From positions 1,116,001-1,180,000 of the forward strand of contig NC_067400.1 of NCBI RefSeq assembly GCF_016432865.1: a stretch of 64,000 nt of DNA. Direction: 5' to 3'. A program made the position numbers and the translations under genes. This document shows, in pieces, positions 46,582 to 64,000 of this stretch. This stretch comes from Antechinus flavipes. Its lineage: Eukaryota. Under the pieces are notes generated by a model that was not told the DNA's origin, ran no database searches, and saw only the letters and a program-made list of their open reading frames with translations. The first letter of the stretch is position 1, and each line of letters starts with the position of its first letter.

Positions 46582-53255
<6,674 letters not shown>

Positions 53256-54270: not shown

Positions 54271-55640
54271 CGCCCCCCTGCCAGCCTTACCCAGGCGCCC
54301 CAGAGACGCCCCCACTGCCTTACCCAGGTGCCCCAGAGATGCCCCCACAGCCTTACCAGGCGCCCCAGAGATGCCCCTGACAGCCTTACCAGGCGCCCCA
54401 GAGATGCCCCCACAGCCTTACCAGGCGCCCCAGAGATGCCCCCACAGCCTTACCAGGCGCCCCAGAGACCCCCCACAGCCTTACCCAGGCGCCCCAGAGA
54501 CGCCCCCACAGCCTTACCCAGGTGCCCCAGAGATGCCCCCACAGCCTTACCCAGGCGCCCCAGAGATGCCCCCACAGCCTTACCCAGGCGCCCCAGAGAC
54601 GCCCCCACAGCCTTACCCAGACGCCCCAGAGACGCCCCCACAGCCTTACCCAGACGCCCCAGAGACGCCCCCACAGCCTTACCCAGGCGCCCCAGAGACG
54701 CCCCCACAGCCTTACCCAGGCGCCCCAGAGACGCCCCCCACAGCCTTACCCAGGCGCCCCAGAGACGCCCCCACAGCCTTACCCAGGCGCCCCAGAGACG
54801 CCCCCACAGCCTTACCCAGGCGCCCCAGAGATGCCCCCACAGCCTTACCAGGCGCCCCAGAGATGCCCCCACAGCCTTACCCAGACGCCCCAGAGATGCC
54901 CCCACTGCCTTACCAGGTGCCCCAGAGATGCCCCCACAGCCTTACCCAGGCGCCCCAGAGATGCCCCCACTGCCTTACCAGGTGCCCCAGAGACGCCCCC
55001 ACAGCCTTACCCAGGCGCCCCAGAGACGCCCCCCTGCCAGCCTTACCAGGCGCCCCAGAGACGCCCCCCTGCCAGCCTTACCAGGTGCCCCAGAGACGCC
55101 CCCCACAGCCTTACCCAGGCGCCCCAGAGACGCCCCCCACAGCCTTACCCAGGCGCCCCAGAGATGCCCCCACAGCCTTACCCAGGCGCCCCAGAGACCC
55201 CCCACAGCCTTACCCAGGCGCCCCAGAGACGCCCCCACAGCCTTACCAGGTGCCCCAGAGACGCCCCCACAGCCTTACCCAGGCGCCCCAGAGACGCCCC
55301 CACAGCCTTACCCAGGCGCCCCAGAGATGCCCCCACAGCCTTACCAGGTGCCCCAGAGACGCCCCCACAGCCTTACCCAGGCGCCCCAGAGACGCCCCCA
55401 CAGCCTTACCCAGGCGCCCCAGAGATGCCCCCACAGCCTTACCCAGGCGCCCCAGAGACGCCCCCACAGCCTTACCCAGGCGCCCCAGAGATGCCCCCAC
55501 TGCCTTACCAGGTGCCCCAGAGACGCCCCCACAGCCTTACCCAGGCGCCCCAGAGACGCCCCCACTGCCTTACCCAGGCGCCCCAGAGACGCCCCCCTGC
55601 CAGCCTTACCAGACGCCCCAGAGACGCCCCCCAGCCTTAC
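54271..55640. repeat. 31-33-bp VNTR (about 43 copies) at the start of putative TEKT1 intron 1
   Basis: cacagccttacccaggcgccccagagacgcccc. Confidence 0.97.
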
Positions 55641-55740
55641 CTTGGCGATCTGGAGAGCGCGAACTCAGGAGCTGCCCCCGAGTTTGTCCACACCGGACTG
55701 CGAACTGGAAGCTGCAAACCCTCAGGTTCCCATGGCAACC
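55641..55740 (-). other. TEKT1: Putative TEKT1 non-coding exon 1
   Basis: Strong donor AAG|GTAAGG at 55641/55640 next to an X-box; 5' end not determinable. Confidence 0.6.
55726..55739. promoter_or_regulatory. RFX X-box (ciliogenesis promoter element)
   Basis: GTTCCCATGGCAAC fits GTTNCCATGGNAAC; extra half-site GTTGCC at 55784-55789. Confidence 0.85.
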
Positions 55741-56687
55741 AAGAACGCGTCTCCCGGGAGATGGGGCTGCGCTCCGCGCGTGCGTTGCCAGGCTTCGCTG
55801 CCCGGCCCCCGCGCGGATCGAGCAGGCGCCCAAGCCTCAACGCCAGCCCCGCGCCGTTGTGGGGTAGAGGGGGAAACCGAGGCAGGGCGCAGGGAAGGGA
55901 AGAAGGGACGGCAAGCTCGGACTCAGGCACGTCCCCAGCCTCTCGGAACCTCGATTTAGCGGTCCGAAAATGGGACGGGGCGGGGCTCTGGCCCCCGCTC
56001 ATCGGGCTGTCCTGCGGACGATGCTCCAGCAGAGGGCGCGGGGAGCTCTCCATCTCCGAGGGTTTCCAACCCAGGCTCCGGAGAGCTGCAGAAGGCGTCT
56101 TCTTCTGGGCGCGGCGGGGAGGGAAGTGCCCCGCAGACTTTGCCATGCCCTACTGATTCCGTCTCCCCACCTGTCACTTGGGGGATTGCGGGCTCGAACA
56201 CGCTTCCAGACCCCAGTCGCGCCCCCTCCAAATCTATCCAATCTAAACCACGAGCGCTTCTCCAACAGCCAATCAGAAGCAAGTAATGAGCCAAGCGCCT
56301 GCCCTCAATGTCTGCTCCGGCCTGAAAGTGAGAGCGGAGGGGCGGGGCTGGGAGGAGGGGCGGGTCCAAGGGAGGGATCGAGGCTGATGGACAGGTCAGG
56401 GGAGGCCCAGATTGCATCTGAGAGGCGGGGCCAGGGGCGGGACCGGGATGGGGGGGGGAGCAGAAATTAAAACTGGGGGCGAGGCCAAGGCAGGATTGAG
56501 TTGAGGCCTTAGTGCGATGGACGTTAGTAGGCGGGACCAGGGCGGGTTTGATTCTGAGGGGGCGTGGCCGCGGCTGACTTGCAAATAAGGGGCGGGGCCA
56601 TAGCGGGATTGAGGCTGAGGGCCGGCCCAGAAGGGGTTGCGGCTGGGGGGCGGGGCACACGCAGTGGGAAGGCTAAGTGAAGCGAAG
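55740..56687. promoter_or_regulatory. Bidirectional CpG-island promoter TEKT1 / SLC25A1-like
   Basis: CCAAT at 56269-56273 (AGCCAATCAG); GC boxes near 56339, 56426, 56589 and 56647; head-to-head genes. Confidence 0.7.
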
Positions 56688-56832
56688 ATGAGGCCGGAGG
56701 TTCTGAGGAGTCCCGGCACTTTGGGGCAAGTCCCTGAGCTCCCTCAACTAGGCCCTAGGCTGGGCCTGGCTGCTGCAGCCCCAGGGTCTGGAGGAGGCAA
56801 GATCACGCACCCGGGAAAGGCGATCCTGGCCG
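56688..56832 (+). CDS. SLC25A1-like exon 1
   Basis: MRPEVLRSP...[22 protein letters not shown]|GTAAC; the start codon choice is inferred. Confidence 0.8.
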
Positions 56833-59800
56833 GTAACGGGGGCGTGGTCACGCGGGGGTGGGGGAGGGGTGCCTGGCGGGGTGGTGGGGAGGGTCCGATT
56901 CCGGGGTCTCCCGGGGGTCACATGAAGGGTTCTAGTGGGCCCCCCCGTGCGGAAAGGCCTGTCATGGAGAGGCCACGGTTATTCCCGCAGATTGGGGGAG
57001 GGGGAGCCATGGTCAACGCCCTAAGCAGCCCCCGCTCCCCTGCCTCCCCCCCAGCGCCCCCTTGGGCTTGGGGAGACTGCGCGCGCGAGAGTCTTCGGGC
57101 CCTGCAGCCCGGGCGGGGCGTCTCCCGGTGAGACCTGGTAACCGCTCCCCTTCCGGAGGCCCCAAGCGCCCTTGTTCTGTCTGGGCCCCGCAGGTGGGAT
57201 CGCGGGCGGCATCGAAATCTGCATCAGCTTCCCCACCGAGTACATCAAGACGCAGCTGCAGCTGGACGAGAGGGCCAAGCAGCCGCGCTACACCAGCATC
57301 CGTGAGGGGCGGGCGGGGGATGGCGGGAAGCAGGCTGGGCCCCCCTCGTGGACCCCCTGTGGGCAGCCAGGGCCCCTCCCCCGGGCAGTCAGGGCCCCTC
57401 CCCCGGGCAGCCAGGGCCCCTCCCCCGGGCAGCCAGGGCCCCTCCCCCGGGCAGTCAGGGCCCCTCCCATGGGCAGTCAGGGCCCCTCCCACGGGCAGCC
57501 AGGGCCCCTCCCACGGGCATTCTGGGACCCTCCCACGGGCTGCCTGGGACCCCACCACGGGCATTCTGGGACCCTCCCCCGGGCATTCTGGGACCCTCCC
57601 CCGGGCAGTCAGGGCCCCTCCCATGGGCAGTCAGGGCCCCTCCCCCAGGCAGCCAGGGCCCCTCCCCCGGGCAGTCAGGGCCCCTCCCCCGGGCAGTCAG
57701 GGCCCCTCCCCCGGGCAGTCAGGGCCCCTCCCCCGGGCAGCCAGGGCCCCTCCCCCGGGCAGTCAGGGACCCTCCCCCGGGCAGCCAGGGCCCCTCCCCC
57801 GGGCAGTCAGGGCCCCTCCCACGGGCAGTCAGGGACCCTCCCCCGGGCAGTCAGGGACCCTCCCACGGGCTGCCTGAGACCCCACCACGGGCTGCCTGGG
57901 ACGCCCCCTCCCTCGCTGACCCCTGTTCCTCTCCCAGTTCACTGTGTGAAGCTGACCATTCAGGAGCACGGCTTCCGGGGCCTCTACAGGGGCCTCAGCT
58001 CCCTGCTCTATGGCTCCATCCCCAAGTCGGCCGTGAGGTGAGTGGCCGGGGGCCATCGGGTCGGTCCCCGTGCTGCCCACAGCCCCAGCAGTTACTCGGA
58101 GGTACCGGTTTGGAGTCAGGAGGAACTGGGTTCAAATCCTGCCTCAGACCCTTAGCTGGGGACCCCCAGCCTCAGTGTCTGCCCGGCTTGTTGGGAGGAC
58201 CCCAGGGGAGAAGGCCCTTCACCAATGAGTCTGGGGCAGGAAGGCTCTGGGGGGCCCCGCCCCGAGGGGAGGGCGTGGGCCCTGGGCAGGGCTTCTCCCC
58301 GGCCTGTCGGCTCTTGGTGCGCCCTAGCTGCTGGACAAGAGGGCCCTCGGCCCCTCTCCCTGCCGACCGGGCTTGGGGCTGCTCTGGTGGAGGTCCCCGA
58401 ACAGCCCCCTGCCCAATCCTCGCCATTGCTGGGTGCCAGCAAGGATGCAACTTTGGGCCCTGCCTGCACAGCCTACGTGGCCCAAGGCAACTTCAGGGCC
58501 GGGCACGGGGATGCCCGCTGATGTTTAGCCCAGGGATGCCCGCTGATGCTTGGCACGGAGATGCCCACTGATGCTTGGCACTCCCAAAGCAACTTCGGGG
58601 CCGGATACGGGGACGCCACTGACGCTTGGCACTCTGCAGGTTCGGCATGTTTGAGTTCCTGAGCAATCGCTTCCGAGATGCCGATGGCAAACTGAGCAAC
58701 AGAAAGAGCTTTCTCTGCGGTCTCGGGGCCGGTGCCACGGAGGCCGTGGTTATTGTCTGTCCTCTGGAAACCATCAAGGTCCGTGCACTCTGAGGCCTGG
58801 GGGTCCCGGAGATGGGCCACAAGTGGGCGACCCAGGCTGGGCTCCCTCCTTCCCGTCCGTGGGGCTGCTCCCTCCAAGGCTGGGGAGGATGGGGAGCAGG
58901 CGGAGGACCGGACTTCAGCGGAAACCTCCCAACGGCGCCCTTCTCTGCAGGACACCGGCGTGGCTGATGGGGGATGGGGAGAGGAGGGGCAGGACGGGGT
59001 CTCCTTTGTCTCTGTCTTGCGGAAGGGGCCCTCTTGGGTTACTTGGCAGAGAGGGCAGCATAATCTCCTGCCCAAGGAGCCCATGCCAGGCCAGAGGGTG
59101 GCATCCCTGGCTGCCCCTGCCAGTGCCAACCTCACATTCCCCAGCGTGGCAGAGAGTGTCAGAGGGAAGGTTTCGTCCCTCGTACAAAACCATCTCGGGA
59201 GGGAGATTCTGGGCTTTGCCGCGTAGGTGCCCGCCCTGGGCAGGGGAGGAGGAAGGGCACAGAGCCCCTGGCCAGGCGGGCTCCAAGAGCCTCGCCACAG
59301 GAACCAGCGGCCCTTCTGTGGTCCACAGGTGAAATTCATTCACAATCAGACGTTCGGAGAAATTAAATACCAAGGATTCTTCCACGGAATCCGTGAGATT
59401 GTGAGGGTACAAGGTACTTGGGGCCCCCCGCCATCCCAACAGCGCGGGCTCCCTCCCCTGGCACTCCCTGTGCCCCTGGGCTGACAGATCTGGTCCTGGG
59501 GGCCGAAAGGAGGCCTCTGCAGCCGCCTGGGTCCCCGGGGTCTTGGGAAGGGGGGGGGATGGGAGGAAGGCCGGAGATGGGCAGCGGCTGGCCCTTCCCA
59601 GGCGTGCAAGGAATCTACCGGGGCCTCACGGCCACCATCATCAAGCAGGGATCCAACCAGGCCATCCGCTTCTTCACAATGACCTCCCTCCGCAACTGGT
59701 ACCAAGGTGAGGGCTGGGCCGGCCGCCACACAGCTCCCTGAGCGTGGCCAGAGGGACCTTGGGAAACGAGCTGCCCGAGGGAAGAGGCCCCAAGGCCCGT

Positions 59801-61552
59801 GGGCAAGGGCAGAGGCTGCCAAGGATTCCAGGCGGTGGCAGAGGAGGGGAAGAGCGCCAAGGCCTCCCCTCCCCCCAGCACCCAAGCGTGGGGAGGCCCC
59901 GGCTGCCACCTGACCGCGCTGGCCTTGATCCCCTCTCCTGGGTCCTCGAAGGCCCTTTGCCGCTGCATGTGCCCCTCCCCCCTCCTCAGCTCTGCCCCCC
60001 TGCAGGACAGCCCAGCCTGGCCCCTCCCCTCTCCCCTACCTGTAGTTGTGTAAACACGCTGAGGGTTTCATGTTCTCCTCAGTAATGAACATCCCCAGGC
60101 TCAGGCCTCGCTCTGCCCTCCAGGGGCCTTGTCCTTTTGGGGTGTCACCCACCTGATAGGGTCACGGAGCCTGGGCCTGTCTTGTCACCTTTAGGATGCT
60201 CAGAGGTCGGTTGTGCTCCCAGGGATGGAGCCGGGGACAAGCAGTGCTCTCAGAGCAGAGTGCTCCCCACTCTGTAGGGCCCCAAAGGGGTTTGGGGTGG
60301 ATTTCAAGGGGTCAGAGAACTTGGACTGGGAGAACATGTAAATAACCACATTGCCACCTAACTGGTCTCCCTTGGTCTCCATATTTTATTTCCTCCATAA
60401 AACAACCTGATTCTGAGAAGGGGCATCTGAAGGCTTCCCCAGCCTGTCACCCGGGGGGCGGGAGGGGGGCTGCCCAAGCAAGGCTCTTTCAGCCAACAGT
60501 CTCAGCATCAGCCGAGATGAGAAAAGTAACGGGGCCCCCCGAGAAAGTCTGGCTCCCGGCGGGGCAGAAAATTAGGGTCCCGGGCTGGGCAGAGCCAAAG
60601 AGAGACTTTCCCCTCAAGGAGCTCAGCTCCTGGGGGAGAGAACGGGGCTTGGTCCAGGGTGAGGTGGTGAGGTTGGTGCTGAGTGGGCAGCGTCTCCAGC
60701 TTTTGCTCCATCTAACACTGAACCCGAATTTCTCCATCAGGTGACAATCCCCAGAAAAAGATCAACCCTTTCATCACAGCCACCTTCGGGATGACCGCAG
60801 GAGCCGCCAGCGTCTTTGGCAACACCCCAGTTGATGTGGTAAAAACACGGATGCAGGTAATGCAAAGGCAGGGGAGCCGGTTCTTGCCCAGGGATAAGAC
60901 AGCCAGAGGAAGAACAACTGATGGGCCCTGCGCCCCCTCGCCCCTCAAAGCCCTTCGTGTTCCATGCCCCTAGAAGGGCGGAGCAACTTGGCTCCTCCAG
61001 TCATGGCAGCCATGAGAAAGGCTGCTGAGACAAATCCAAACGCCTGGAGTCCAAGGCTGCGCCACCCCTCATGCTGACCTAGGGTTAGAGCTGGTGGTGC
61101 CCGCAGACATNNNNNNNNNNNNNNNNNNNNNNNNNNNNNNNNNNNNNNNNNNNNNNNNNNNNNNNNNNNNNNNNNNNNNNNNNNNNNNNNNNNNNNNNNN
61201 NNNNNNNNNNNNNNNNNNNNNNNNNNNNNNNNNNNNNNNNNNNNNNNNNNNNNNNNNNNNNNNNNNNNNNNNNNNNNNNNNNNNNNNNNNNNNNNNNNNN
61301 NNNNNNNNNNNNNNNNNNNNNNNNNNNNNNNNNNNNNNNNNNNNNNNNNNNNNNNNNNNNNNNNNNNNNNNNNNNNNNNNNNNNNNNNNNNNNNNNNNNN
61401 AAACAGACAGACAAATAGATAGAGGAATAGATGGAGATGATAGATAGACAGAGGGATGAATGGAGATGATAGATAGATAGACAGATAGATAGAGGAATGG
61501 ATGGAGATGATAGACAGACAGAGAGAGGGATGGATGGAGATGATAGACAGAC

Positions 61553-61591
<39 letters not shown>

Positions 61592-63154
61592 GGGATGGAT
61601 GGAGATGATAGACAGATGGACAAATAGATAGAAGAATGGATGGAGATGATAGACAGACATAGATGGATGGATGGAGATGATAGATAGATAGACAGACAGA
61701 TAGATGGATGGATGGAGATGATAGATAGACCAACAGACAGACAGATAGATGGATGGATGGAGATGATAGATATAGACAGACTGACAGACAGACAAATAGA
61801 TAGNNNNNNNNNNNNNNNNNNNNNNNNNNNNNNNNNNNNNNNNNNNNNNNNNNNNNNNNNNNNNNNNNNNNNNNNNNNNNNNNNNNNNNNNNNNNNNNNN
61901 NNNNNNNNNNNNNNNNNNNNNNNNNNNNNNNNNNNNNNNNNNNNNNNNNNNNNNNNNNNNNNNNNNNNNNNNGGTAGATGTATAGTTAGACACATGGATG
62001 GACAGTTACATAGATGGGGAGATAGATGAATGGATGGAAATAGATAGAGGGGTGGGTGGGAATAGATAGAGAGAGAGAGAGAGAGAGATGGGTGGTGATG
62101 ATAGAGAGATGGGTGGGAATAGATAGACAGACAGAGGGATGGATGGAGATGAGAGATAGATAGATAGGTAAAAAGAGGGAATGGATGGAGATGATAGACA
62201 GATAGGCATAGATAGATATACTTAGACATACAGCTAGAGATAGATGTATAGTTGGACACATGGATAGACAGTTACATAGATGGGGAGATAGATGAATGGA
62301 TGGATACATAAATATGTAGGTGCATGGGTTGATATACATATATTAATGTGTATATATATATATATATATATAGCTAAACATGTAGTTTGACAGTTACATA
62401 GATGGATGGACAGAAGAATGGGTGGACTAACGGATGCATGGACAGAAGGATAGATGGATACATAGGTGCATGAATCCATGGCAGGATAGACAGCTATACA
62501 CATACTTACGTATATATTTAGATACGTAGTTTAATAGTTACGTAGATGGATAGAAGAATGGGTGGGCAGACAAGACGGTGGGTGGACGGATGGATGGCCA
62601 GATACAGAGGCACATGGTTAGATAGAAAGCTACATGCACACATACATATGTAGCAGACACACAGTTTGATAGACACATGGATGGATGTTTGGATGGATGG
62701 TTGGACGGACGGATGAATAGAGATGCATAGATACGTAAGTACATGGATGGATAAGTAGACATACATACATAGGGAACTAGACACATAGTTTGATAGTCAC
62801 ATAGCTGGATGGACAGACGGATAGACGGATGGATGAGCCGGCAAATAGACGCAAAGATTGCTCCCATCGGCCGGGTCCCTTCTCTCCCCAGCATCTGTGC
62901 TCAGCTGTCGTGTCTTCCCTTTAGACCGCCAACATCCTGGGAGCAGGGATCCCTTCCTATTTATGGAATGGCCCAGTGCCCAGCGCACAGTAGGTGCTAC
63001 ACCCGATTGCTGGCGTAGCTGCCCGCCAAGTTTTGCTTTTCCTTCCCGTGCCCGTCATCGCTGTTCCTCTTTTCTTTCAGAGCCTGGAAGCGAACAAGTA
63101 CAAAAGCACGATTGACTGCATCTCCCAGATCTATAAAAATGAGGGCCTGCTGGC
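56688..63154 (+). CDS. Mitochondrial tricarboxylate (citrate) carrier, SLC25A1-like paralog. Exons 56688-56832, 57194-57301, 57938-58037, 58640-58778, 59329-59413, 59602-59706, 60741-60856, 63081-63154; final exon beyond the window
   Basis: 872 bp in frame, no stops, all GT-AG; three carrier motifs [24 protein letters not shown]; [19 protein letters not shown] and [10 protein letters not shown] as in CIC; exon sizes match SLC25A1 as recalled. Symbol withheld because synteny argues for a paralog. Confidence 0.93.
57194..57301 (+). CDS. SLC25A1-like exon 2
   Basis: [26 protein letters not shown]; 108 bp. Confidence 0.95.
57355..57900. repeat. 22-bp GC-rich VNTR (about 24 copies) filling SLC25A1-like intron 2
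   Basis: gggcagtcagggcccctccccc; period 22 (57361, 57383, 57405). Confidence 0.95.
57938..58037 (+). CDS. SLC25A1-like exon 3
   Basis: [33 protein letters not shown]; 100 bp. Confidence 0.95.
58640..58778 (+). CDS. SLC25A1-like exon 4
   Basis: FGMFEFLSN...[21 protein letters not shown]; 139 bp. Confidence 0.95.
59329..59413 (+). CDS. SLC25A1-like exon 5
   Basis: [29 protein letters not shown]; 85 bp. Confidence 0.95.
59602..59706 (+). CDS. SLC25A1-like exon 6
   Basis: [33 protein letters not shown]; 105 bp. Confidence 0.95.
60741..60856 (+). CDS. SLC25A1-like exon 7
   Basis: [38 protein letters not shown]; 116 bp. Confidence 0.95.
61401..62830. repeat. (GATA/GGAT/GACA)n simple-repeat tract with gaps in SLC25A1-like intron 7
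   Basis: Direct reading. Confidence 0.9.
63081..63154 (+). CDS. SLC25A1-like exon 8
   Basis: [25 protein letters not shown]; 74 bp; GC|GTAAGT. Confidence 0.93.
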
Positions 63155-64000
63155 GTAAGTGCCTCGGGACACCCGAGCTGCCCCGACTTTCCTTGACAGG
63201 AAGGCCAGGCCTTCCTTTCTCCCCGTTGGGAGGGTCCCCACGGTGTCATGTGGCGTCGTCTGGCCATTTCTCTCTGATGATTTAACCCTGAAATTCAGCC
63301 TTGGTGCCCCCACGTCCAGACCCCAGAGAGACAAGGAGCCAAGCCAGGGTCCTGGTGGGGGAGGGGGTCCAGGGCACGCTTGGACTTCCCCCGACTCATG
63401 TCCTACTTCGTGTCAGCATCCAGCTCCGTGCAGCATATTTTTAAAAGCCCAAGAGGGTTATGGGAGCACCTGAAGGATTGTACCAGCCTCAGAGGAGGGA
63501 GGAGCCCCTGAGTGGGGAGGATCTCCTGTGGGCTGACTGGCCCCAGTCGGGGTTTTCAGCAGGGGATCACCCAGAGGCTGATACTTTGCTGAGGAGGAGG
63601 AGGGGGAGGCTGTCCAGCCTCAGGAAGCCCAGAGTTCTCTCTCACCTATCAGGTCTTTGGCCTTGGGGTCTGAATCCCTCCCTTAGGCCCTCCCCAGCCT
63701 CTCAGAGAACCCCTCTTTGAGGGAATCGCCCAGTGAGATCCTGAAGGTCAGTGGTCATCTCTGGGTCTTTAGGACAGTCCCCAGACTGGAGGTGAGGAGG
63801 AGAAATGTTCATTTTAAAAACATTGAGTTCCAATTGTCTCGCTCCCTCTCCCCGCCGCCTCCTTGAGAAGGCAAGCTATTCACCACAGGTCATACACATG
63901 TAGTTACAAAACCATTTCCATCGTAGTCACGCTTTCAAGAAAAGTGAAGGAAAAATTTCAAGTGTGCTCCCTCTGCATTCAGACACGCGGTTCCTTCTCT

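What the first reader, a model, noticed from the sequence alone, without database searches (positions are those of the whole stretch)
56688..63154. Intact second mitochondrial citrate carrier (SLC25A1 paralog) at a locus where eutherians appear to have none
Seen: eight in-frame exons with canonical splice sites, the SLC25A1 intron pattern (so not a retrocopy), all three PX[DE]XX[KR]X[KR] motifs and the CIC substrate-contact segments. Known (recalled): human SLC25A1 lies at 22q11 between GSC2 and CLTCL1, and no SLC25 gene sits beside TEKT1 in human or mouse. Inference: an ancient, possibly whole-genome-duplication-derived paralog kept in marsupials and lost in placentals. It has divergent loops ([11 protein letters not shown] versus IHDQTSPNPKY) and a longer N-terminus, which could mean altered kinetics or regulation.
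Basis: partly seen in the sequence, partly recalled or inferred. Interest (0 to 1): 0.85.

Follow-up and report, generated by a model that had tools for sequence, protein, structure and literature searches.

The report
Second citrate carrier gene in a marsupial
This marsupial (yellow-footed antechinus) carries, next to TEKT1, an intact and selectively maintained second mitochondrial citrate-carrier gene: the mammalian counterpart of fish slc25a1a, an ancient copy not seen in placental mammals or birds, and already present in public gene annotation.

Summary
Eight in-frame GT-AG exons of an SLC25A1-type carrier lie at 56688-63154. Both N gaps sit inside intron 7 and hide no coding sequence. Exon 9 is intact, 3.4 kb past the window end.

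The window is Antechinus flavipes, and the gene model equals RefSeq XP_051847479.1, named 'tricarboxylate transport protein, mitochondrial-like'.

- The same species has a canonical SLC25A1 (XP_051829159.1) on another chromosome-scale contig. It is 71% identical to this protein.
- A careful ML tree puts the window gene in a 100/99-supported clade with the reptile, amphibian, coelacanth and shark '-like' copies and the teleost 'A' copies.
- An AU test rejects grouping it with canonical mammalian SLC25A1 (p=0.003).
- The Tektin | carrier | smoothelin-like gene order is shared with a lizard. Canonical SLC25A1 sits beside a clathrin heavy-chain gene.
- No eutherian or bird protein fell in the A clade.

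The gene is under strong purifying selection: against Tasmanian devil, omega is 0.09, with 0 nonsynonymous and 11 synonymous changes in the carrier core. The marsupial stem branch is long.

So this is a real, functional ancient paralog. It is already annotated and belongs to a named orthogroup (slc25a1a), so interest is modest. Loss in placentals was tested only at the protein-database level. I found no earlier record of it in the scan on other DNA.

The parts
56688..56832 (+). Exon 1: ATG plus the N-terminal extension, up to ...[12 protein letters not shown] (phase 1 donor).
   Evidence: First in-frame ATG, identical to the start of RefSeq isoform X3. Less constrained than the rest: 4 aa differences from Sarcophilus, omega 0.28.
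57194..57301 (+). Exon 2 (108 nt): helix 1 with PTEYIKTQ.
   Evidence: Same size and phase as in canonical and A-type genes of other vertebrates.
57938..58037 (+). Exon 3 (100 nt).
58640..58778 (+). Exon 4 (139 nt): includes PLETIK of repeat 2.
59329..59413 (+). Exon 5 (85 nt): the divergent matrix loop [11 protein letters not shown].
   Evidence: D153N and P159I (human-type numbering) fall here.
59602..59706 (+). Exon 6 (105 nt): helix 4 with [11 protein letters not shown].
   Evidence: The Q182R change falls in the [WYF][KR]G motif.
60741..60856 (+). Exon 7 (116 nt): [10 protein letters not shown]; ends in phase 0.
61111..61972 (.). Two assembly gaps (61111-61400 and 61804-61972) and the ATAG/GATG microsatellite between them. 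All of this is inside intron 7.
   Evidence: No coding exon is expected here in any family member.
63081..63154 (+). Exon 8 (74 nt), the last exon in the window. Exon 9 lies about 4.3 kb downstream, outside the window, at L001:21463-21577.
55970..56328 (+). Alternative upstream first exon used by RefSeq isoforms X1/X2. It is a 120-aa ORF through the CpG-rich intergenic region, and it replaces the conserved [12 protein letters not shown] segment. The end coordinate is approximate.
   Evidence: It probably does not give a functional carrier N-terminus (inference).
46582..53162 (-). TEKT1 coding region (Tektin, 401 aa), head-to-head neighbour of the carrier gene.
   Evidence: L001:613-7193 on the minus strand, Pfam PF03148. 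Window coordinate = L001 coordinate + 45969.
57361..57870 (.). 22-bp GC-rich minisatellite (23 copies) filling intron 2. It is stop-free in the exon 2/3 frame.

Best explanation
The locus is the Antechinus flavipes orthologue of the vertebrate 'A-type' citrate carrier, known as zebrafish slc25a1a and as NCBI 'tricarboxylate transport protein A' or '-like'.

Shown:
- The gene arose by duplication of SLC25A1 before the last common ancestor of jawed vertebrates.
- It has stayed beside TEKT1 and a smoothelin-like gene since at least the amniote ancestor.
- It coexists in this genome with the canonical SLC25A1.
- It is kept intact by purifying selection.

Inferred mechanism: a nine-exon, 329-aa, six-helix carrier of the mitochondrial inner membrane. 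It exchanges citrate (or another tricarboxylate) for malate by the alternating-access mechanism of the SLC25 family. It uses the same substrate-contact stretches and gate motifs as canonical SLC25A1.

The copy evolved fast on the marsupial stem, mainly in loops and the N-terminus, and is now tightly constrained. That pattern suggests a specialised, possibly tissue-restricted, role rather than pure redundancy.

No A-type protein was seen in eutherians, birds or diprotodont marsupials, so the copy was probably lost there.
For: Identity: P0183/XP_051847479.1 starts with exactly the window's 290 aa. The locus maps to GCA_016432865.2 CM028219.1.

Family: three Mito_carr repeats, E=3e-67. Exon sizes and intron phases are identical to kiwi canonical SLC25A1 and to lizard and tarpon A-type genes.

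Paralogy:
- Careful ML tree of 70 rows: A clade 100/99, marsupial copies inside amniote A 98/91, canonical mammals 99/98.
- AU tests reject marsupial-like plus canonical mammals (p=0.0034) and a placement at the vertebrate base (p=0.031).

Same-genome canonical copy: P0297, on a different contig.

Synteny:
- Tektin(-)/carrier(+)/CH-domain gene(-) in Antechinus, Monodelphis, Gracilinanus and Lacerta. Sarcophilus shows the Tektin neighbour within the 3-kb flank fetched.
- The CH-domain gene belongs to the smoothelin family.
- Tarpon slc25a1a lies next to an XAF1-like gene, and a sturgeon gene model fuses XAF1-type zinc fingers to the carrier.
- Canonical SLC25A1 lies next to a clathrin heavy-chain gene in possum, elephant shrew and kiwi.

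Selection, against Sarcophilus: dS 0.084, dN 0.0073, omega 0.088. In codons 49-329 there are 11 synonymous and 0 nonsynonymous differences, while introns are 9-13% diverged.

Function-relevant residues:
- All nine positions where human disease mutations impair the carrier are kept (residue list from PMC4746751).
- Only 8 of 137 near-invariant columns differ, and six of those changes are conservative.
Against: - No expression, localisation or transport data were available, so 'citrate/malate exchanger' is inferred from sequence.
- The marsupial stem branch is about 0.6 substitutions per site, against about 0.08 for the canonical mammalian stem. Two near-invariant positions are changed non-conservatively (P159I, Q182R). 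Substrate preference or regulation could therefore have shifted.
- A FastTree run on 215 rows pulled the marsupial copies to the base of the vertebrates, which shows long-branch sensitivity. The AU rejection of that placement is only p=0.031.
- Loss in eutherians, birds and diprotodonts rests on absence from protein-database hits, not on genome searches.
- The tree does not resolve the canonical copies as a clade, so the timing of the duplication relative to lampreys is open.
Confidence: 0.88

Rival explanations
1. It is the single SLC25A1 orthologue of this species, moved from the clathrin/GSC2 neighbourhood to the TEKT1 neighbourhood.
For: In Sarcophilus and Sminthopsis the orthologous protein is named plain 'tricarboxylate transport protein, mitochondrial'. 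No dasyurid appeared in the possum-centred canonical cluster.
Against: A canonical copy of the same species exists on another contig (P0297). The tree and an AU test separate the two. The TEKT1 neighbourhood is shared with a lizard A-type gene.
Confidence: 0.01
2. It is a marsupial-specific DNA-level duplicate of canonical SLC25A1 that diverged quickly. Its position among non-mammalian '-like' genes would then be a long-branch artefact.
For: The marsupial stem branch is long, and FastTree misplaces the clade.
Against: - AU rejects union with canonical mammals (p=0.0034).
- The same three-gene microsynteny is found in Lacerta.
- The copy shares A-type residues with the lizard and tarpon genes, for example GGIAGG, CVxLTxQxHG and TAxFGxTAG.
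Confidence: 0.02
3. It is an intact-looking but decaying or unexpressed copy.
For: No expression data were obtained. The copy seems to have been lost repeatedly in other amniote lineages. Two of the three RefSeq isoforms use an odd upstream first exon.
Against: - The reading frame is open over all nine exons in Antechinus and Sarcophilus, and intact full-length protein models exist for Sminthopsis, Monodelphis and Gracilinanus.
- There are 0 nonsynonymous against 11 synonymous changes in the carrier core, with introns about 10% diverged.
- All splice sites are canonical.
Confidence: 0.03
4. It is functional but neofunctionalised: a carrier with changed substrate preference or regulation, or a tissue-specific carrier (for example testis or ciliated cells) driven from the CpG-rich promoter region it shares with TEKT1.
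For: - Evolution accelerated on the marsupial stem and was followed by tight constraint.
- There are non-conservative changes at two otherwise invariant positions, and the matrix loop is rewritten.
- The head-to-head arrangement with TEKT1 is conserved from lizard to marsupials.
Against: The contact-point stretches and all tested disease-critical residues are unchanged. Q182R moves the sequence toward the general family consensus. Nothing here measures expression or transport.
Confidence: 0.2

Closest known systems
Canonical SLC25A1 (CIC/CTP, the mitochondrial citrate carrier; human 22q11.2)
   Same: - Three Mito_carr repeats and nine exons with identical exon sizes and intron phases.
- About 70% identity.
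- Identical substrate-contact stretches and all nine tested disease-critical residues.
   Different: - Different locus: beside TEKT1 rather than beside a clathrin heavy-chain gene.
- Separate clade, and it coexists with the canonical copy in the same genome.
- Longer N-terminus, a rewritten matrix loop in repeat 2, and much faster evolution on the marsupial stem.
Zebrafish/teleost slc25a1a ('tricarboxylate transport protein A') and the NCBI 'tricarboxylate transport protein, mitochondrial-like' genes of sharks, coelacanth, amphibians, turtles, crocodilians and lizards
   Same: - Same orthogroup by tree (100/99 support).
- Same gene structure and shared diagnostic residues.
- Same neighbourhood: TEKT1 and a smoothelin-like gene in the lizard, an XAF1-like gene in tarpon and sturgeon.
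   Different: The marsupial members are far more diverged: 72% identical to the lizard A-type, whereas lizard and tarpon A-types are 83% identical to each other. They are the only mammalian members seen.
RefSeq models XP_051847477-9 (Antechinus flavipes), XP_031813212/3 and UniProt G3VAL5 (Sarcophilus), XP_074153830-2 (Sminthopsis), XP_056662924 (Monodelphis), XP_044512680 (Gracilinanus)
   Same: This is the very gene and its marsupial orthologues.
   Different: These are automatic annotations only. In Sarcophilus and Sminthopsis the paralog carries the plain SLC25A1 product name, which hides the paralogy.

Membership tests
Mitochondrial carrier family (SLC25, Pfam PF00153) | Three tandem ~100-aa Mito_carr repeats | tested here: met
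   PF00153, 3 stretches, E=3.4e-67 for P0183.
Mitochondrial carrier family (SLC25, Pfam PF00153) | PX[DE]XX[KR]X[KR] signature on helices 1, 3 and 5 | tested here: met
   [24 protein letters not shown]. Repeat 1 ends in Q, exactly as in canonical SLC25A1.
SLC25A1 / citrate carrier subfamily | Falls within the SLC25A1 clade, and all closest database relatives are citrate carriers | tested here: met
   In some searches all named hits are tricarboxylate transport proteins; the vertebrate clade is 100/99 against the invertebrate outgroup rows (a sea urchin, two spiders and a tick).
SLC25A1 / citrate carrier subfamily | Nine-exon gene with the family's intron positions and phases | tested here: met
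   exons 2-8 of 108/100/139/85/105/116/74 nt and phases 1,1,2,0,1,1,0,2 are identical in kiwi canonical, lizard A, tarpon A, Sarcophilus and the window.
SLC25A1 / citrate carrier subfamily | Residues needed for citrate transport: P45, G130, E144, G167, S193, M202, R247, R282 and Y297 of human CIC | tested here: met
   9 of 9 conserved. The residue list is from Table 2 of PMC4746751.
SLC25A1 / citrate carrier subfamily | Citrate/malate exchange activity and location in the mitochondrial inner membrane | not testable with these tools
   Needs proteoliposome transport assays and localisation experiments.
A-type paralog (slc25a1a orthogroup) | Monophyly with fish 'A' and tetrapod '-like' copies, to the exclusion of canonical SLC25A1 | tested here: met
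   (100/99). AU tests (p=0.0034; p=0.031). FastTree disagreed on placement but never joined it to canonical mammals.
A-type paralog (slc25a1a orthogroup) | Conserved neighbourhood: Tektin head-to-head upstream, smoothelin-like gene downstream | tested here: met
Canonical SLC25A1 orthologue (22q11-type locus) | Adjacent to a clathrin heavy-chain gene (CLTCL1) and grouping with mammalian SLC25A1 | tested here: not met
   The window gene is flanked by TEKT1. Canonical copies lie beside a clathrin heavy-chain gene. AU p=0.0034. A separate canonical copy exists in this species.
Processed retrocopy | Intronless, with a poly-A remnant | tested here: not met
   Eight introns at the family's positions.

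The most novel reading that the evidence does not exclude
After the A-type citrate carrier was lost in eutherians, birds and perhaps diprotodont marsupials, the copy kept by dasyurids and opossums went through a burst of change and was then locked in by strong selection. On this reading it is a neofunctionalised carrier, co-regulated with TEKT1 from a shared promoter region. It might, for example, supply or export citrate in sperm or ciliated cells. Such a mammalian mitochondrial transport function would have no counterpart in placentals.
Probability: 0.15. Interest if true: 0.55.

Novelty: already known. Interest (0 to 1): 0.33.

Why it matters
1. Orthology bookkeeping. Devil and dunnart annotations give this paralog the plain SLC25A1 product name. 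Marsupial 'SLC25A1' expression data, such as the dunnart uterus table in PMC5799185, may therefore refer to either gene.

2. Zebrafish models. slc25a1a has been knocked down as a model of human SLC25A1 and 22q11.2 deletion phenotypes (PMC4487986, PMC4746751). By name and identity pattern it belongs to this A-type lineage, which placentals seem to lack. The closer counterpart of the human gene is then slc25a1b. This is an inference, because the zebrafish proteins themselves were not in my tree.

3. A natural experiment. Marsupials could show what a second citrate exporter does in a mammal, and why it appears to have been dispensable several times.

None of this changes what is known about how citrate carriers work.

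Tried and rejected
- The spliced protein could not be passed to the search tools by reference. I used the stop-free stretch 57142-58038 (exon 2, open intron 2, exon 3) with a region restriction to reach full-length relatives.
- The look-up of encoding contigs found nothing for P0007 and P0049, because only the longest isoform of a gene is on record.
- No DNA was available for Monodelphis, Gracilinanus, Trichosurus, Chiloscyllium or Elephantulus. No opossum-dasyurid dN/dS or branch test was therefore possible.
- The shark locus showed no informative neighbour within 10 kb.
- FastTree on all 215 rows placed the marsupial copies at the base of the vertebrates. I treat this as long-branch attraction, since the site-heterogeneous careful tree, the AU test and synteny all disagree.
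- Six literature searches found no paper describing the marsupial copy or the age of the A/B split.
- The scan's notes held nothing on the canonical locus of this genome.
- Retrocopy, sole translocated orthologue, marsupial-specific duplicate and pseudogene were all considered and rejected (see rival explanations).


Full report
**What is in the sequence**

Reading 56000-64000 and assembling the proposed exons gives eight + strand exons:
- 56688-56832
- 57194-57301
- 57938-58037
- 58640-58778
- 59329-59413
- 59602-59706
- 60741-60856
- 63081-63154

Every exon has an AG acceptor and a GT donor. The joined 872 nt have no stop and translate to 290 aa of an obvious SLC25A1-type mitochondrial carrier. 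No exon 9 lies in the last 846 bases of the window.

**The assembly gaps, tested first as requested**

The N runs at 61111-61400 and 61804-61972 both lie in intron 7 (60857-63080). They are embedded in ATAG/GATG-type microsatellite, the usual cause of such gaps.

Exon 7 ends in phase 0 and exon 8 starts in phase 0. In four other genes of the family a 116-nt exon is followed directly by a 74-nt exon. Those genes are kiwi canonical SLC25A1, the lizard and tarpon A-type genes, and the Tasmanian devil orthologue. The protein alignment shows no missing residue at ...KTRMQ|SLEA....

The gaps therefore hide no coding sequence. I did not try to fill them, and the continuity of the intronic DNA across them remains unknown.

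**Whose gene it is**

A search with the stop-free stretch covering exon 2, the open intron 2 and exon 3 found P0007. This is 'tricarboxylate transport protein, mitochondrial-like isoform X2 [Antechinus flavipes]'. It is identical to the window from exon 2 onward, and its alternative first exon is window 55970-~56328.

Isoform X3 (P0183, XP_051847479.1, 329 aa) begins with exactly the window's 290 aa. The locus is GCA_016432865.2 CM028219.1:1161970-1193834 (L001; window coordinate = L001 + 45969).

Exon 9 is at L001:21463-21577, about 3.4 kb past the window end. It has an AG acceptor, is in frame, and is followed by a stop. So the gene is complete, and it is already annotated.

**Is it a second copy in this genome?**

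Yes. The 90% cluster represented by P0040 contains P0297, XP_051829159.1, 'tricarboxylate transport protein, mitochondrial [Antechinus flavipes]'. It is 313 aa long and lies on a 727,308,865-bp contig, whereas the window's contig is 636,717,922 bp.

P0297 is 98% identical to the brushtail-possum canonical protein and 71% identical to the window protein. Opossums also have both kinds of copy.

**Phylogeny**

I built a careful IQ-TREE (LG+C20 PMSF) on 70 rows. The results were:
- A clade of 37 rows has 100/99 support. It holds the shark and skate, coelacanth, bichir, paddlefish, bowfin, amphibian, turtle, crocodilian and lizard '-like' copies, the teleost 'A' copies, and the five marsupial '-like' rows, in roughly species-tree order.
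- The marsupial rows sit inside the amniote subclade (98/91).
- Canonical mammalian SLC25A1 (eutherians plus possum, glider, koala, opossum and monito del monte) forms its own clade (99/98).

Forcing the marsupial '-like' rows together with canonical mammals costs 37 lnL units and is rejected (AU p=0.0034).

A FastTree of 215 rows instead pulled the long marsupial branch to the base of the vertebrates. That placement costs 19 lnL units under the better model (AU p=0.031), and synteny contradicts it.

In the 215-row tree, all 27 eutherian rows and the six canonical marsupial rows form one clade with three unnamed rows. All five bird rows are canonical-type. No eutherian, bird or diprotodont protein appeared among the closest relatives of the window protein.

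**Synteny**

| Copy | Species | Gene order or neighbours |
|---|---|---|
| A-type | Antechinus, Monodelphis (an F-box gene lies further upstream), Gracilinanus, Lacerta agilis | Tektin(-) / carrier(+) / CH-domain gene(-) |
| A-type | Sarcophilus | Tektin(-) upstream; only 3 kb of flank was fetched |
| A-type | Tarpon (slc25a1a) | Next to an XAF1-like gene, with Rap-GAP and INPP5K-like genes nearby |
| A-type | Sturgeon | One gene model fuses XAF1-type zinc fingers to the carrier |
| Canonical | Possum, elephant shrew, kiwi | Immediately downstream of a clathrin heavy-chain gene |
| Canonical | Donkey | One isoform model even fuses clathrin and carrier domains |

The CH-domain gene belongs to the smoothelin family (E=6e-23 to the smoothelin and SMTNL1 CH domains). 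The two paralogs therefore occupy two different, anciently conserved neighbourhoods.

**Gene structure**

Exons 2-8 measure 108/100/139/85/105/116/74 nt and the intron phases are 1,1,2,0,1,1,0,2. This holds in every gene examined, canonical or A-type. That confirms a DNA-level paralog and excludes a retrocopy.

**Is it functional?**

Against Tasmanian devil, all nine exons align without gaps. Over the whole CDS, dS=0.084, dN=0.0073 and omega=0.088. From codon 49 onward there are 11 synonymous and 0 nonsynonymous differences. Introns differ by 9-13%, with the GC-rich intron 1 higher.

Pfam finds three Mito_carr repeats. All nine residues at which human mutations impair the citrate carrier are conserved (list from PMC4746751; check).

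Among 137 alignment columns that are at least 97% conserved in 62 rows from spiders to mammals, the window protein differs at eight. In human-type numbering these are T43S, V49I, M143L, D153N, P159I, Q182R, V290M and I296L. Six are conservative. P159I lies in the rewritten matrix loop [12 protein letters not shown]182R brings the [WYF][KR]G motif of repeat 2 closer to the general family consensus.

The helix 2, 4 and 6 stretches are unchanged or changed conservatively. These stretches carry the common substrate-contact points of the family (Robinson and Kunji 2006, as cited in PMC5830478).

From this I infer a working tricarboxylate/malate exchanger. Transport, localisation and expression were not testable here.

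**Rate pattern**

The stem leading to the marsupial A-type copies is about 0.57 substitutions per site, followed by 0.30 to the dasyurids and 0.42 to the opossums. The canonical mammalian stem is about 0.08.

| Comparison | Identity |
|---|---|
| Window protein vs opossum orthologue | 77-80% |
| Window protein vs lizard A-type | 72% |
| Lizard A-type vs tarpon A-type | 83% |
| Canonical possum vs elephant shrew | 91% |

So the copy changed fast early in marsupial history and is tightly constrained now in dasyurids. That fits a shift in role, or past relaxation followed by renewed constraint. The data here cannot tell these apart.

**Comparison with what is known**

The gene is a member of the SLC25A1 subfamily. 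Within it, it belongs to the A-type orthogroup, whose zebrafish member slc25a1a is a named, experimentally studied gene (PMC4487986, PMC4746751).

The marsupial genes are present in RefSeq and UniProt as automatic models. I found no paper that describes the marsupial copy, the pre-gnathostome age of the A/B split, or the loss in placentals. I therefore rate the feature 'already known' as a gene and kind, with an under-described evolutionary story.

**Verdict**

'Lost in placentals' is shown only at the level of protein databases, and 'whole-genome-duplication-derived' is plausible but unproven. Interest is modest: it matters mainly for orthology assignment and for the choice of zebrafish model gene.

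Noticed in passing
Protein clusters (no window coordinates): In Sarcophilus harrisii and Sminthopsis crassicaudata the orthologue of this paralog carries the plain product name 'tricarboxylate transport protein, mitochondrial' (UniProt G3VAL5, XP_031813212, XP_074153830). Antechinus and the opossums have '-like'. This invites mis-assignment of orthology in marsupial studies.
   Followed up: partly
Hit lists: No A-type protein from diprotodont marsupials (possum, glider, koala) or from Dromiciops appeared, only canonical ones. No bird A-type appeared either, although a gharial and turtles have it. This suggests repeated independent losses among amniotes. No monotreme protein of either type was listed.
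   Followed up: no
window 55970-56328: RefSeq isoforms X1 and X2 start from an upstream exon: a 120-aa ORF through the CpG-rich TEKT1/carrier intergenic region. It replaces the conserved [12 protein letters not shown] start of helix 1. It looks like a transcript-model artefact or a non-functional isoform.
   Followed up: partly
window 57361-57870: Intron 2 is filled by a 22-bp GC-rich minisatellite (23 copies, 91% matches). It happens to be stop-free in the exon frame, so exon 2, intron 2 and exon 3 form one 299-codon open stretch (57142-58038).
   Followed up: partly
window 54282-55641: A 33-bp tandem array of 41 copies (93% matches) lies between the TEKT1 coding exons and the carrier gene. 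It is the subject of another first-stage note (s1-184932).
   Followed up: no
L003:4857-7323 and protein P0001: In tarpon an XAF1_C-domain gene lies directly upstream of slc25a1a. A sturgeon gene model fuses XAF1-type zinc fingers (PF21366) to a partly duplicated carrier. The XAF1-carrier linkage is therefore older than tetrapods.
   Followed up: partly
Protein P0204 (Dromiciops gliroides): The Dromiciops protein named '-like' actually falls in the canonical marsupial clade, on a long terminal branch (0.33). This may be a poor gene model or a fast-evolving canonical copy.
   Followed up: no
Lamprey rows P0160 and P0199 in the tree: Two lamprey citrate-carrier proteins do not join the A clade and sit unresolved among the canonical copies. 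The duplication cannot be dated relative to the cyclostome split with these data.
   Followed up: no
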